From: Salpingoeca rosetta
Lineage: Eukaryota; Protista; Choanoflagellata
NCBI GenBank assembly: GCA_033442325.1
Contig: JAWQFM010000031.1
Location: forward strand, 257,745-321,744
DNA length: 64,000 nucleotides
Reading direction: 5' to 3'
Part shown: one piece after another, positions 41,449 through 54,674 of the stretch
Layout of the letters: each line of letters begins with the position of its first letter
How positions within the stretch are numbered: the first letter of the stretch is position 1
Notes under the pieces: generated by a model
Told to the model about the DNA's origin: nothing
Seen by the model: the letters and a program-made list of their open reading frames with translations, nothing else
Database searches by the model: none
Position numbers and translations under genes: made by a program

Positions 41449-44400
41449 ATGATGAAGTGGCCGGTTGTGCGATCGAGCTTGCTTGATGAGCTTGGGTTAT
41501 CTGTCTATCACACATCCTTTGCCTAGTGCACCCCATCTCACCCGATTTCTCGATATCACGACATGTTCGTTTTGCAGGCTGCCTTCTGCAAGTTCAAGAC
41601 AAAGTCGGCGTGCCACAAGGCTGCTTGTGGGTTCATACACCATGATGAGGTGAGTGCTTTGTCTGTCTCTCTGTGTGTGTGTGTGTATGTGTGTGTGTAG
41701 GTGCTTGTGTTTGTCTATGAGTATTTGTGTGCCCTCCCTCTCGCCACACACACACACACTTCTCTCTATCTGTCTCTCTGTCTCTGTCTGTCTATCTCTG
41801 TCTGTGTGTCTCTGTCTCTGTCTGTCTGTGTCTGTCTCTTTCTCTCTCTCTGTCACTCTTTCTCTCTCTGTCACTCTCTCTCTCTCTCTGTCACTCTCTC
41901 TCTCTCTCTCTCTCTCTCTCTCTCTCTCTCTCTCTCTCTCCATCACATCCTCACCAAGCACCAACTATTTGTCCCATCCAACCAAAACATCACGCCGAAG
42001 GTTGATGAAGACTGTGACCTCGGCCACTTGTGCAAGCGGAGGTATTGTAAGCGTCGGCACCCACCACCGGTAAGTGTGGTCTTTCTCCTTCAGAAGCGTG
42101 AACAAAACGATGCTTGAGCGAGAAACTGACATCCTCCCACACGCACGCATACACACACGCTCATGCACACGTACGCTCACACGCGCACGCACGCACACGC
42201 GCATGCACACACACACACACACACACGCACGCAGATCTGCAAGCTCAGGCACATGTGCGAAAAGCGGGGTTGTTTTTTCTTGCATCCGATGGTCGACCTT
42301 CGGGACAGACCCAAGTGCTGGTTCTTGCAACAGGCTGGCGCACCATTATTGCAAGCAATCATTACGAACTTGACCGGAAACAACAGTATCACTACAGTTG
42401 CTGATGCACGCAGGCAGCAAGTTCATATTCGCGGCGGTACGGCGGAAGAGCGCGTCAAGGCTGCTGACTTGTGCAAAACAGTTTTCAACCTCGTATCATG
42501 CGTAAGATTTCCATTCCCTGGCCGCTCAAAGGAGGACCTCAAACGCAATCAGGCACCACTCCAGCTCGCAAAGCAGAATGACATCGCACTCTTCTACAGT
42601 GATGAGGAGGTCGTCATGGTGTACTGGGATGCAGTGCGGCGCCCACCTGAGGAGGTGCTGGCTGAAGTGAAGGAGCTGCTCATCGCGTCATCAGCCGAAC
42701 AGCGCGACCGTGAACACGTCCAAATCCGAGATGCACCCAAGAGCTTGTTTTTGCGCGACGCCGGTGCTTCTTGGCTTAGAGTGACCGTTGCAGCCGCTGC
42801 TCCCGACGTGGCTGTGTCCGTTGACCCACGAACTCAGCGTGTATTCATCAACGGAGGTACAGCTGCTGCTCGGAAACGCGCTGCTCAGGCTTGCAAAACA
42901 TTCGTCCGGCAGCTGGTCAAGTCTGAAGATGTGTTGCTGCCTGGCCTCTCCAAGGCCGACATCAAGCGCAATCAAGCTGCCAATGACTGTGCGAAGCAGT
43001 ATGACGTGACGCTGTTCGTCGGTGAGGCCAAGGCAACGCTCGTGTATTGCTCCACAAATCAGCGGTCTCTGGGTGCCCTGCCACGCATCAAGGAACTGCT
43101 GCAAACCCCAACTCAGCACCCGCCTCAGCACCCAGCAATTGTGACCCAAACTGTTACAGTCCCGAACGAACGCGCCCTTATCCCCGTGATTAAGGCTGTG
43201 CGACCCGCTCTCCCTGAGTATGTCTCCACGCAATTTCCCCAGACCAAGCTCAACATTGAGTTTCGGCACAGCGACCTCCCAGTTATGACGTTGAGCGGGC
43301 CCAGCACGCAAGTGGGCAGAGCTGCGGCAGCAATCACGGCGTTTTTAAAGGGTGTGGTCGTTCACAAGACGAGCGCCCCACACCCAGGTCCCACGGCGCA
43401 AGCTGCTCTGGAGAGGTTGCTGAAGGCAAAAGTCTCTCAGCTCAACACCAGATTCAAGCAAGGCAATCACAAGTCTGTGCAGCACAAGGGGTCGCCAGGC
43501 AAGAGCAAGAAGTCGCCACGTGTCTTGATTGCGTTCAACGTCGCTGAAACGAGAGTCATGCATTCGCTTCTGCGCGTGCACTTGACGGGCCCAACCGAAG
43601 CAAGCAAGGACCTCGAGCGGCTTTCCAAGACCGTGCAAGACTTTATTCATGACTTCACCTCCCAAACGATCTCAGCACCCAGCAAAGAACTGTATAACGC
43701 GCTCAAACCCGTCTTTCTCAAGCACAGCGTGGCCGCGCAATGGGTCGGCGACGACTGCAGCATTGTGCTGTCAGGAGCCAAGCAAAGCGTGAATACGGCC
43801 AGGCAACTCCTTCAACGTGACAATGGCAGCACTGGAACGCCTGGCGGACAGGCAAGTTGTGCTACGTCCCTTCCACCCACTCTTGGCAGCGGCGTATCTT
43901 CAAGCCCAACAACACGCAAACTCCTTGCGTCTACTAGCATCGTTGCCAGTGCTCTTCTGCTTCCCAAGAATGTTGGCCGCCTGAAGAGTTTGCTCGAGGA
44001 TGCGATTGGGGCCAATGCTGGAGTGCGGGCGGAGCCGTGCTTGCAGAATCAAGAGCCTTCGCGCGAGGTGGCCAGGCTGGTTGGCACAAAGGATGTGGTG
44101 GTGCCAGCACACAAGATGGCCGAGCAGAAGCTGCTGCAGCTGGAGCAAGACATGCTCACGGAGAACATCGAGCTCGACACGGCCGAGCTTGGCGTGTTCA
44201 AACGCCAGGAGGGGCGTGGCCTGATGAGGAGCGCACGTGACATGGGCGTCGTTGTGCTGAGCCCACGTGCCGCGCACAAGATGCTCGAGGCAGATATTCA
44301 CCAAGCATTATCACAGTGCACGGCAAAGGCAACCCGACCAGTCCACGTGCTGACAGCGAATATCTCCAGCTCTTCAAGGCCGGCTCAAGTTGACGTGGTG

Positions 44401-46961
44401 TGCGGGGATTTCAAGGGCATGCGCGTTGATGTCATTGTCAACGCCGCAAACGAGGATCTGATGCATGGTGGTGGCATTGCTTTGGCCATCGCCGAGGCCG
44501 CGGGTCTCCAGTTCTCGGACGAGTGCCAGAAGTCTGTGGCCGCGCACGGCCGCGTGCGTGCAGGCACAGCACGCCACACCTCGTCGGGTGACTTGGCCAA
44601 GTCGACGCAGATCAAGCACGTGCTGCACGCCGTGGCGCCAATTTACAGTGGTGACGGCGGCAGTGGTGGTGGCAAATCATTCTTGACGTCTGCCCTGGCT
44701 TCGCTGCCCAAGCTCGGGTTTGGCGGAGATACTCAGGCGCAACTGAGTGCGTCGCTGCGCGCGTGTGTGCAAGAGGCGATCCGGCTTGCTGGGCGCCTCC
44801 CTGATGTGAGCTCCATTGGCATCCCAGCGATTGGGTCTGGCGTGTTTGGATGGCCAGAAGCAGAGGCAACGCGGGAGATTGTCAAGGCGGTGGTGGCGTC
44901 GGTGAACAGCGGCAGCCTGGGCAACATCAAGCGCGTTGTGCTGTTTGACGCAATGCAAGCCAAGGCAAGCGCGTTTGCAGCGGCTGTGGGAACCTCTATG
45001 GCGCTTTGCGGACGCCGCGATGCGCAGATCAAGCACGTGCTGCACGCCGTGGCGCAATTTACAGTGGTGACGGCGGCAGTGGTGGTGGCAAATCATTCTT
45101 GACGTCTGCCCTGGCTTCGCTGCCCAAGCTCGGGTTTGGCGGAGATACTCAGGCGCAACTGAGTGCGTCGCTGCGCGCGTGTGTGCAAGAGGCGATCCGG
45201 CTTGCTGGGCGCCTCCCTGATGTGAGCTCCATTGGCATCCCAGCGATTGGGTCTGGCGTGTTTGGATGGCCAGAAGCAGAGGCAACGCGGGAGATTGTCA
45301 AGGCGGTGGTGGCGTCGGTGAACAGCGGCAGCCTGGGCAACATCAAGCGCGTTGTGCTGTTTGACGCAATGCAAGCCAAGGCAAGCGCGTTTGCAGCGGC
45401 TGTGAAGGCGCTTGCTGAGCGCGACGGTGCTGGCAGCAAGAGCAGCAGCAGCACGACCAGCAGCACGAGCACGACCAGCAGCAGTGCTTCGTACCATGTC
45501 CCACGTGTGCTGGAGAAGCCAGAGTACGTGTGGATGTGGCGGTTCCATGAGCGCGACCGGTGGGTGATGTATGACTGGGACCAGCAGGTGCAGATTGAGC
45601 AGGCACACGGGGCGGGTCGTCAAGATGACTTCCGCATCAGCGGTGACCGTGGCGGCGTTCGCTCTGATTCCAAGCACATTCCTGAGGGGGAGAAGTATCC
45701 CGTGTACTTTGTGAACCTGGCGAAGATGACACAGCGCAACGCCAAGTCCAACTTCGAGCGACGCATCCAACGTGTTCGCTGGACAGAAGGCATGCCGCTT
45801 CCGCCGCTGTTTGAGGAGCGGCGACAGGAGGCGCTTGCGCTCGCACAGGCGCAGCGCCGTGCACATCATTCGTCCTGGTTCTCCTTTGCCTCGACCACTT
45901 CATCGTCAGCGGCGCGACCGATGCCATCGAGTGGTATCAGCAACAGCGGCGGCAGCAACAACAGCGCGCGCATTGTGAATGTGCGCAAGCCAGAAATGGG
46001 AACACCGTACGTCACTGGCAAGGCGCCCAAGCCGTCGTCCATCACATCCACGGCAGCCCTGCCGAAGAAAGGCTTCGTGCTGTGTGGACCCAGGGCAAAG
46101 GTGCAGGCAGTGAAGGACAAGTGGACGAGCGAACTGCACGACATGTGGCAACAGTCGGAAATCAAGTTGTTTGAGAACGACCGCGAGCACAACGAGCGCC
46201 TTCTTGACCACAAGGATGTGCGTGCTGCCATTGCCAAGCACGGTGCCAAGATCCGCGTGAACCCTGCTGGCAACATTGTCCTCGAGTACGTGACTGAGTC
46301 TGCCTTCTATGAGATCAACAGCACGATGGTGAAGCTGGTCGAGGAGATCAAGGTGCCACGCACGTGGACGACGATGAAGGATCCTCGCAGCGTGGAGGTG
46401 GTGCCGGTGCCTGCAGGCACGCAGGAGTATCAGGACGTGGTGGAGATTTTCTTACGAGGCGGCTTCACGAAAACTGTGCTCAAGGTGGAGCGCGTGCAGA
46501 ACAAGTTCTTGTGGGATGCTTATTTCGACAAGCGCAGATGGCTGAATCGCCACAGTGGCGGCGCCAACGAGAAGCACATGTTCCACGGCACCCGTAGTGT
46601 TGAGCCGAACAAAATTGTCAAGGACAGCTTCGACTTTCGCCACGCGCGCGCGGGCATGTTTGGTCGCGGTGCCTATTTCGCCGAGTACATGTCTTACAGC
46701 GACAGCTATGCCTTTCCCGTGCAGCCCCCCACCATGAACCACTTCTCCTCGCGCTATGGCACCGGAGCAGGCGTGCGGCAGGTGTTCATTGCACGTGTGG
46801 CGGCCGGAAAAGTGGAAGAGCGATCGTCAGACAGCTCCATTGTTCGCCCTTCTGATGGGTACGATTCTGTTACAGGCACGGTGTCGGCCAATCACAAGGC
46901 CATCATCATCTACGACTTGCAGCAGGCCTACCCAGAGTACCTGATCACGTACAGCGCCTGA
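41449..46961 (+). CDS. Macro-PARP paralog A: 3 CCCH zinc fingers - KH-like repeats - macrodomain - WWE - PARP catalytic domain (internal duplication/frameshift at ~44989-45404)
   Basis: Exons 41449-41463 (tentative), 41578-41649, 42001-42069, 42235-46961. Macro: GDF..VDVIVNAANEDLMHGGGIA...IPAIGSGVFG. WWE: YVWMW...WVMYD...IEQAH...VNLAKMTQRN..S..RRIQR. PARP: VERVQN..LW..Y, MFHGT, FGRGAYFA, YS..YA, FIARV..G, DSV, AYPEYLITY. Confidence 0.88.
44606..45404 (+). repeat. Tandem direct duplication of ~383 bp (44606-44988 / 45023-45404) with 34-bp spacer inside the PARP-A macrodomain
   Basis: CGCAGATCAAGCACGTG...GCAGCGGCTGTG appears twice. The second copy lacks one C (GCGCAATTT vs GCGCCAATTT). Confidence 0.95.
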
Positions 46962-54351: not shown

Positions 54352-54674
54352 GGACACGTGTGAGAGGGGGGGGGAGGCTTTCTTGGTGTGTGTGTGTGTG
54401 TGTGTGTGTTATACATTGTGCCTACGCTATGATCAGTGTGCTTTTTGTGGATCCAACTTGAACTGTTTCCTTGTATTTTGCGTGCGTGCGCGCGTGTGTG
54501 TGGTCGAGGGTCATGTTCCTACGCTGAAGAACTCGCTTGTCATGAATGTGTGTGTGTGTGTATGTATGCGGTGTGCGAGTTGAAATAAAGATCGAAAGTC
54601 CCACAGCATGCAAGCTAGCCTCGACGGGCTGATTGGAGGAGGTTGTGTGTGAGAAGAGTCCCCTCGGGTGCACG

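What the first reader, a model, noticed from the sequence alone, without database searches (positions are those of the whole stretch)
44060..54395. Mosaic identity between the two PARPs: homogenised macro/WWE/linker but divergent catalytic loops
Seen: A and B are near-identical at about 44060-44290/51880-52110, across most of macro-WWE, at 46025-46500/53445-53920, and in the last ~70 coding nt plus ~40 nt of 3' flank. They differ sharply in the N-terminal sensor half and inside the ART domain (A: HGTRSVEPNKIVKDSFDFRHARAGMFG...AFPVQPPTMNHFSSRYGTGAGVRQ; B: HGTGAVDPAIIADTNFDFRYASAGLFG...AYVCPDDPTKRQ). Inference: recurrent gene conversion spares the D-loop and acceptor loops, implying selection for distinct substrates or escape from an antagonist, as seen in host-pathogen arms races.
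Basis: partly seen in the sequence, partly recalled or inferred. Interest (0 to 1): 0.75.

Follow-up and report, generated by a model that had tools for sequence, protein, structure and literature searches.

The report
Gene-conversion mosaic in tandem PARP genes
Two neighbouring macrodomain-PARP genes of the choanoflagellate Salpingoeca rosetta have repeatedly overwritten parts of each other, leaving old, different stretches that include the whole catalytic core; it is a clean but ordinary case of gene conversion, and nothing shows an arms race.

Summary
Genes A (PTSG_09729) and B (PTSG_09730) of Salpingoeca rosetta are tandem macro-WWE-PARP paralogs. Four near-identical blocks alternate with old, diverged stretches.

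Synonymous divergence (dS):
- 0 to 0.16 in the blocks
- 0.95 to saturated in three islands: two short linkers and the 387-nt ART core
- about 1.7-1.8 in the N-terminal half

At codons with the same amino acid, 18/563 differ in the blocks against 32/75 in the ART core (P = 8e-21). Constraint alone cannot explain this. Interlocus gene conversion, in at least two rounds, is the best reading.

The selective reading is not supported as stated. The unconverted ART stretch is one contiguous block that covers the whole catalytic core. Its conserved strands are full of synonymous changes. Its dN/dS is 0.2-0.4, which is purifying selection. Two other islands lie in linkers with indels. Selection that protects the ART core is possible but cannot be tested with two sequences.

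This is either a real disruption or an unmerged assembly overlap.

Earlier notes of this scan report the same kind of mosaic in several other gene pairs of this genome.

The parts
42163..45102 (+). Gene A (PTSG_09729), last exon, first open frame: KH-like repeats and macrodomain. It ends at a stop caused by the internal duplication and frameshift.
   Evidence: Macro E = 2e-24; P0002.
45006..46961 (+). Gene A, second open frame: second copy of the macro C-half, WWE, pre-ART module and ART domain.
   Evidence: PARP E = 9e-18, WWE E = 2e-6.
50290..54351 (+). Gene B (PTSG_09730), last exon, uninterrupted: KH-like repeats, macro, WWE, ART.
   Evidence: (P0001, 100% identical).
44059..44294 (+). Converted block 1 (partner 51877-52112): 96% identical, dS 0.11-0.16.
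44295..44397 (+). Island 1 (partner 52113-52245): linker before the macrodomain, 30-nt length difference, synonymous sites saturated.
44398..45863 (+). Converted block 2, macro-WWE (partner 52246-53295): 97.1% identical, dS 0.047. The core is 1.0% diverged and the edges 8-9.5%.
44606..45404 (+). Internal tandem duplication in gene A. Copies are 44606-44988 and 45023-45404 (no substitution, one 1-nt deletion in copy 2), separated by a unique 34-nt filler at 44989-45022. Both copies carry the A-type variants.
44680..44694 (+). Micro-island (partner 52528-52542; repeated at 45096-45110). It holds 5 of the 8 differences of the 804-nt block-2 core within 15 nt, giving three amino-acid changes.
   Evidence: (P = 1.5e-5).
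45864..46025 (+). Island 2 (partner 53296-53442): Ser-rich linker with indels, dS about 0.95.
46026..46505 (+). Converted block 3 (partner 53443-53922): pre-ART module and first ART strand, 99% identical, dS 0.028.
46506..46892 (+). Island 3, ART catalytic core (partner 53923-54281): 68% nt identity, dS 1.25, dN 0.28, three indels. His and Tyr of the triad are kept in both genes.
46893..47001 (+). Converted block 4 (partner 54282-54392): last two ART strands, the stop codon and about 43 nt of 3' flank. No substitution; it ends at (GT)n.

Best explanation
A and B are old tandem paralogs, 7.8 kb apart and in the same orientation, that encode CCCH / KH-like / macro / WWE / mono-ART proteins. Non-allelic (interlocus) gene conversion has repeatedly copied stretches of 0.1-1.1 kb between their 3' halves. 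This kept four blocks almost identical.

The N-terminal half and three islands were not overwritten and keep the old divergence. The islands are two linkers that carry indels and the 387-nt ART core. Inside the ART island both copies stayed under purifying selection. The amino-acid differences therefore collect in the helix after HGT and in surface loops, while the conserved strands differ only at synonymous sites.

Shown: the mosaic in synonymous divergence, at least two ages of conversion, and purifying selection in the ART island.

Inferred: the mechanism (recombinational repair between the copies). Also inferred is that islands persist because heterology stops the conversion tracts. The longest exact match inside the ART island is about 20 nt.

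Whether selection first set up or still protects the ART island is open.
For: - Both genes carry macro, WWE and PARP domains and are PTSG_09729 and PTSG_09730 of S. rosetta. The genome holds no third close copy that could be a donor.
- dS by segment: N-terminal half 1.7-1.8; block 1 0.155; island 1 saturated; block 2 0.047; island 2 0.95; block 3 0.028; ART core 1.25; C-terminal block 0.
- Synonymous codon differences at identical amino acids: 18/563 in the blocks against 32/75 in the ART core (Fisher P = 8e-21) and 83/142 in the N-terminal half.
- Permutation and runs tests.
- Age heterogeneity among the blocks, and block 2 edges against its core.
- Exact runs reach only 325 nt, and scattered fixed differences lie inside the blocks. 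The two copies were therefore assembled separately.
- Conserved strands of the ART island are full of synonymous changes.
- Mosaic divergence of tandem paralogs through interlocus gene conversion is a described pattern (PMC3924837; PMC3728101; bioRxiv 10.1101/2025.10.29.685298; seen).
Against: - Only two sequences exist, so there are no segment trees, no GENECONV-type test against an outgroup, and no direction of transfer.
- No independent assembly, read or transcript data could be reached.
- The internal duplication in A lies inside the most homogenised block and shows that the local assembly may not be flawless.
- GC3 is not clearly raised in the converted blocks, so there is no sign of GC-biased conversion.
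Confidence: 0.8

Rival explanations
1. Selection for different substrates, or for escape from an antagonist, removes every conversion event that would homogenise the ART core. The island is then a selected 'divergence island' of two enzymes that share reader modules but have different catalytic cores.
For: - The ART island is flanked on both sides by tracts converted recently (about 1% and 0% divergence), yet it has kept dS 1.25.
- Both cores keep His and Tyr and are under purifying selection, so both were functional for most of that time.
- 9 of 12 residues of the helix after HGT differ, and one loop differs by 13 residues.
- Theory and case studies say that islands persisting in the face of conversion can mark selected divergence (PMC3728101, PMC3924837).
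Against: - dN/dS in the island is 0.22-0.39, with no excess of amino-acid change.
- The island covers the whole core, not the loops.
- Two other islands lie in linkers that carry indels.
- Once a stretch is diverged, heterology alone blocks conversion tracts.
- Gene A may be broken.
- With an outgroup-like relative, the counts of unique changes are 4 in A and 9 in B, which is not significant.
Confidence: 0.3
2. Assembly artefact. The near-identical blocks come from cross-talk or collapse of the two copies during assembly or consensus calling.
For: - The internal 383-nt duplication with a junk-like filler in gene A.
- The filler resembles the true downstream sequence weakly (shuffle P = 0.017). 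This looks like an unmerged overlap of contig ends.
- The window contains six runs of N.
Against: - The blocks carry 45 discrete fixed differences, and the longest exact run, 325 nt, is shorter than a Sanger read.
- Both copies of the A duplication carry the A-type variants, not the B-type.
- Consensus cross-talk cannot turn dS above 1 into dS of 0.03.
- Tract borders are sharp and the reading frame is kept in B.
Confidence: 0.05
3. There is no conversion. The blocks are simply under much stronger purifying selection than the rest.
For: The blocks are folded domains: macro, WWE, KH-like modules and the last ART strands.
Against: - Synonymous sites show the same mosaic.
- The 3' untranslated flank is also identical.
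- Invariant protein motifs inside the ART island have many synonymous differences.
Confidence: 0.01
4. A single recent chimera-forming event, such as unequal crossing-over or replacement of the whole 3' half, was followed by local re-divergence. Exchange was not recurrent.
For: The genes are in tandem and in direct orientation. The locus is also bracketed by inverted ABCC-gene repeats, so it is prone to rearrangement.
Against: - One crossover gives one breakpoint, not seven alternations.
- Islands with dS of 1 or more cannot re-diverge inside blocks of dS 0.03.
- The blocks differ significantly in age.
Confidence: 0.05

Closest known systems
Interlocus (non-allelic) gene conversion with divergence islands in duplicated genes (concerted evolution; Innan and co-workers' models; GOT1 paralogs of Tigriopus; HMA4 of Arabidopsis halleri)
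   Same: Tandem paralogs. There is a mosaic of near-identical tracts and old islands, a step-like profile of synonymous divergence, tracts of a few hundred to about 1,000 nt, and several rounds of exchange.
   Different: The setting is new: a choanoflagellate macrodomain-PARP pair. No outgroup or population data exist here, so neither the direction of transfer nor selection on the islands can be tested.
Vertebrate PARP14/PARP15-type macrodomain mono-ARTs, which evolve rapidly in host-virus conflict (PMC4038475)
   Same: The macro + WWE + PARP catalytic architecture. The best full-length hits outside S. rosetta are fish PARP14 (31-36% identity). There is no catalytic Glu.
   Different: There is one macrodomain instead of two or three. 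The N-terminus carries CCCH fingers and KH-like repeats. By sequence, the ART domain scores best against tankyrase-2, then PARP15 and PARP12. No evidence of positive selection was obtained.
Other gene-conversion mosaics noted by this scan in the same genome (tyrosinase, acetyl-CoA synthetase, HSPA12-like, receptor pairs)
   Same: Old paralogs with recently homogenised stretches and an old, purifying-selected domain left apart (unchecked notes).
   Different: Those are different gene families, and several of the pairs are inverted rather than tandem. I did not re-test them.

Membership tests
Interlocus gene conversion between paralogs | Two paralogous copies in one genome, close enough to recombine | tested here: met
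   A and B lie on the same strand, 7.8 kb apart. They are the only close copies in the 55-Mb genome.
Interlocus gene conversion between paralogs | Synonymous or non-coding divergence is mosaic, with sharp steps that constraint cannot explain | tested here: met
   dS is 0-0.16 in the blocks against 0.95 to saturated in the islands. Fisher P = 8e-21; permutation P < 5e-5. The identical stretch runs into the 3' flank.
Interlocus gene conversion between paralogs | Segment trees with an outgroup or orthologs are incongruent (GENECONV-type test) | not testable with these tools
   No relative is closer than about 50% identity in the ART domain or 31-36% at full length. Only two sequences are available.
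Interlocus gene conversion between paralogs | The mosaic is present in the organism, not only in the assembly | not testable with these tools
   No reads, transcripts or second assembly could be reached. Indirect support: fixed differences lie inside the blocks, and exact runs are at most 325 nt.
Macrodomain PARP (PARP14-like mono-ADP-ribosyltransferase) | PARP catalytic domain together with macro and WWE domains in one protein | tested here: met
   Pfam PF00644, PF01661 and PF02825 are above cut-off in both genes. PDB hits to tankyrase-2, PARP15, PARP12 and PARP14 have E = 1e-15 to 2e-23. The model has the expected strands.
Macrodomain PARP (PARP14-like mono-ADP-ribosyltransferase) | H-Y-(non-Glu) triad typical of mono-ARTs | tested here: met
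   His (HGT) and Tyr (GAYFA) are present in A and B. The position aligned with the Met of fish PARP14 (the Glu-equivalent) is Ala in both. This rests on alignment only.
Macrodomain PARP (PARP14-like mono-ADP-ribosyltransferase) | ADP-ribosyltransferase activity | not testable with these tools
   This needs an enzyme assay.
Arms-race (positively selected) immune gene | Excess of amino-acid over synonymous change in the divergent region | tested here: not met
   ART island: dN/dS 0.22 (Jukes-Cantor corrected), pN/pS 0.39.
Arms-race (positively selected) immune gene | Site-specific positive selection across a phylogeny, or a McDonald-Kreitman excess | not testable with these tools
   Only two sequences; no population data.

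The most novel reading that the evidence does not exclude
The ART-core island, and perhaps the 15-nt micro-island and the amino-acid-biased differences in the macrodomain, are actively protected from homogenisation. S. rosetta would then keep two enzymes with shared ADP-ribose reader modules but different sensors and catalytic cores. That would be a pre-animal example of diversified antiviral-type macro-PARPs shaped by conflict.
Probability: 0.15. Interest if true: 0.6.

Novelty: new member of a known kind. Interest (0 to 1): 0.3.

Why it matters
The pair shows concerted evolution at work in a PARP14-like gene pair of the closest unicellular relatives of animals. It also marks which parts of the two proteins have been kept apart for a long time: the N-terminal putative sensor half and the whole catalytic core.

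That gives a concrete, testable contrast: the same macro and WWE modules with different ART cores. The process itself is textbook, the scan has noted it in several other gene pairs of this genome, and no evidence for conflict-driven evolution was found.

The practical warnings also matter. The public model of PTSG_09729 contains a duplicated half macrodomain, patched by a 44-nt 'intron'. Trees of these domains will be misleading if the mosaic is ignored.

Tried and rejected
- Third donor copy. I looked for one in the genome. Only distant macrodomain hits at about 50% identity turned up.
- Independent fragments. I looked for transcript-derived or read-derived fragments and for closer orthologs with a 169-aa ART query. 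The result was three metagenomic relatives at 35-50% identity and nothing from S. rosetta. An exact look-up of P0001 gave nothing.
- Splicing out the A duplication. No canonical GT-AG pair excises it exactly. Only weak GC-AG pairs exist at the required 416-nt spacing.
- Origin of the filler. The 34-nt filler has no other copy in the genome.
- GC-biased conversion. GC3 shows no clear difference between blocks and islands.
- Relative-rate test with P0022 as outgroup: 4 against 9 unique changes, not significant.
- Literature. No paper mentions either locus tag. Gene conversion in the PARP family turned up only for human PARP4 and its pseudogene.
- Big profile search. I did not run it, because the claim does not rest on an absence of relatives.
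- Handling of the duplication. For the codon comparison I left the second copy out of gene A inside a script.
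Full report
**What is there.** The window is scaffold C31:257745-321744 of the Salpingoeca rosetta assembly.
- Gene B is the uninterrupted frame 50290-54351. It is 100% identical to PTSG_09730.
- Gene A is two frames, 42163-45102 and 45006-46961. It is PTSG_09729.
- Both genes carry a macrodomain, a WWE domain and a PARP catalytic domain above Pfam cut-offs.
- Their best full-length relatives outside the species are fish PARP14, at 31-36% identity.
- By sequence, the ART domain scores best against tankyrase-2, then PARP15, PARP12 and PARP14 structures.
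- His and Tyr of the catalytic triad are present in both genes. The Glu-equivalent aligns with Ala. At most mono-ADP-ribosylation is therefore expected; this is inference.

**The observation.**
- Block 1: 44059-44294 / 51877-52112, 96% identical.
- Block 2: 44398-45863 / 52246-53295, 97.1% identical, longest exact run 325 nt.
- Block 3: 46026-46505 / 53443-53922, 99% identical.
- Block 4: 46893-47001 / 54282-54392. It covers the last 66 coding nt, the stop codon and about 43 nt of 3' flank. There is no substitution, and it ends at a (GT)n run.

Between the blocks lie three islands:
- Island 1: 44295-44397, the linker before the macrodomain, with a 30-nt length difference.
- Island 2: 45864-46025, a Ser-rich linker.
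- Island 3: 46506-46892, the ART core, at 68% nt identity with three indels.

The N-terminal halves are only 22-37% identical in protein.

**Is it more than constraint?** Yes. Nei-Gojobori dS values by segment are as follows:

| Segment | dS |
|---|---|
| N-terminal half | 1.7-1.8 |
| Block 1 | 0.155 |
| Island 1 | saturated |
| Block 2 | 0.047 |
| Island 2 | 0.95 |
| Block 3 | 0.028 |
| ART core | 1.25 |
| Block 4 | 0 |

- I then counted only codons whose amino acid is the same in A and B. The blocks differ at 18 of 563, the ART core at 32 of 75 and the N-terminal half at 83 of 142.
- Blocks against ART core gives Fisher P = 8e-21. Overall heterogeneity gives P = 8e-61.
- The longest run of unchanged synonymous codons is 220, against at most 136 in 20,000 permutations.
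- The identity also runs into non-coding flank.

Purifying selection alone is therefore excluded. Copying between the genes is required.

**Recurrent exchange.** The blocks differ in age.
- The core of block 2 (44497-45716) and block 3 are both about 1.0% diverged, and block 4 is 0%.
- Block 1 is 4.2% diverged. The two edges of block 2 are 8.1% and 9.5%.
- Core against edges gives P = 1e-4 and 3e-7. Core against block 1 gives P = 0.002.

At least two rounds with different tract ends are needed. Tract sizes of about 110 to 1,050 nt are ordinary for non-allelic conversion (established knowledge; reviews seen: PMC3924837, PMC2588116).

**The ART island.** I folded the ART domain of A (mean pLDDT 75) and mapped the differences on it.
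- The island starts in the helix before the HGT strand and ends just before the last two strands. It covers the whole NAD-binding core.
- The invariant strands are old at the DNA level. In EKHMFHGT, 3 of 8 codons differ synonymously. In the RQVF...EER hairpin, 8 of 16 do.
- Amino-acid changes collect in three places:
 - the helix after HGT (9 of 12 residues);
 - the loop after the Y-S helix (13 extra residues in A, at the place of the tankyrase zinc-binding loop);
 - the loop before the DSV strand (7 of 14 residues).
- The D-loop proper differs at 3 of 14 residues. The short strand 4-5 loop differs at 2 of 5.
- dN/dS for the island is 0.22 (0.39 uncorrected).

The picture is an old segment under purifying selection in both genes. 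It is not one in which only the loops escaped conversion or evolved fast. Inside the island, the longest exact matches I can see in the printed codon alignment are about 20 nt (read by eye, not computed). Once a stretch has diverged this far, heterology should by itself stop conversion tracts (inference from what is known of homology-dependent recombination).

Theory and case studies do take persistent islands as candidates for selected divergence (PMC3728101, PMC3924837). I therefore keep that reading as a rival at about 0.3. The arms-race version rests on no positive evidence.

Gene A contains a tandem duplication.
- 44606-44988 is repeated at 45023-45404, with no substitution and one missing C.
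- The copies are separated by a 34-nt filler found nowhere else in the genome.
- Read straight through, the frame shifts and stops at 45100.
- The public protein model keeps most of the duplicated half macrodomain and restores the frame with a 44-nt GT-AG 'intron' (sequence).
- No canonical intron can remove the duplication exactly.
- Both copies carry A-type variants, so this is not a mix of A and B.
- The filler weakly resembles the true downstream sequence (shuffle P = 0.017). That would fit an unmerged overlap of two contig ends.

I cannot decide between an artefact and a real, very recent disruption of A.

**Small features inside the homogenised macrodomain.**
- Five of the eight differences of the block-2 core lie within 15 nt (44680-44694; P = 1.5e-5).
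- Over the first 251 codons of block 2, 13 differences change the amino acid and 2 do not (pN/pS 2.1).
 - This is not significantly above 1.
 - It is far above what dN/dS of 0.22 predicts (P = 3e-4).
- One of these changes replaces the first Gly of the GGG loop in B.

These features could be small protected patches, relaxed constraint on a recently broken A, or chance.

**Assembly artefact as an explanation of the blocks.** This is unlikely.
- The blocks contain 45 discrete differences.
- Exact runs are shorter than a Sanger read.
- Consensus cross-talk cannot create a 40-fold step in synonymous divergence.

Direct confirmation was not possible, because no reads, transcripts or other assembly were reachable.

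**Context.**
- The pair is bracketed by inverted repeat arms, 33699-40723 against 61564-54669, at 87-97% identity. They encode the C-terminal ATP-binding domains of two ABCC/MRP-type transporter genes. The neighbourhood has therefore been duplicated more than once.
- Earlier, unchecked notes of this scan describe the same kind of conversion mosaic in several other gene pairs of this genome.
- No paper mentions either locus tag.

**Verdict.** Gene conversion is strongly supported. The claim that the catalytic loops are selectively spared, and the arms-race claim, are not supported. This is a new member of a known kind, of modest interest.

Noticed in passing
window 33699-40723 and 54669-61564: Inverted repeat arms bracket the PARP pair: six colinear pieces, 87-97% identical. 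ORFs in them match the C-terminal nucleotide-binding domain of ABCC/MRP-type ABC transporters. Two inverted ABCC paralogs therefore flank A and B.
   Followed up: partly
window 44606-45404: Gene A has a 383-nt internal tandem duplication of the macrodomain C-half, with a unique 34-nt filler and a 1-nt deletion. It breaks the frame (stop at 45100). The public model PTSG_09729 patches it with a 44-nt intron. It may be an unmerged contig overlap.
   Followed up: partly
window 44680-44694 / 52528-52542: A 15-nt micro-island with 5 nucleotide differences and 3 amino-acid differences lies inside an otherwise 1%-diverged 804-nt stretch (P = 1.5e-5).
   Followed up: partly
window 44398-45566 / 52246-52998: The few differences left in the homogenised macrodomain are mostly amino-acid changing (13 against 2 synonymous). 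One is Gly to Cys at the first Gly of the GGG loop in B.
   Followed up: partly
window 46893-46910 / 54283-54300: The residue aligned with the catalytic Glu of poly-ADP-ribose-forming PARPs is Ala in both genes and in three metagenomic relatives. This gives an H-Y-A triad rather than the H-Y-I/L of human mono-ARTs.
   Followed up: partly
window 46713-46775: The extra 13-residue loop of A sits at the position of the tankyrase zinc-binding loop. It has no Cys and is predicted with low confidence.
   Followed up: no
window 5822-5921, 8711-8926, 33202-33599, 36442-36931, 38147-38246, 56427-56526: Six runs of N (assembly gaps), several of them inside the inverted repeat arms.
   Followed up: no
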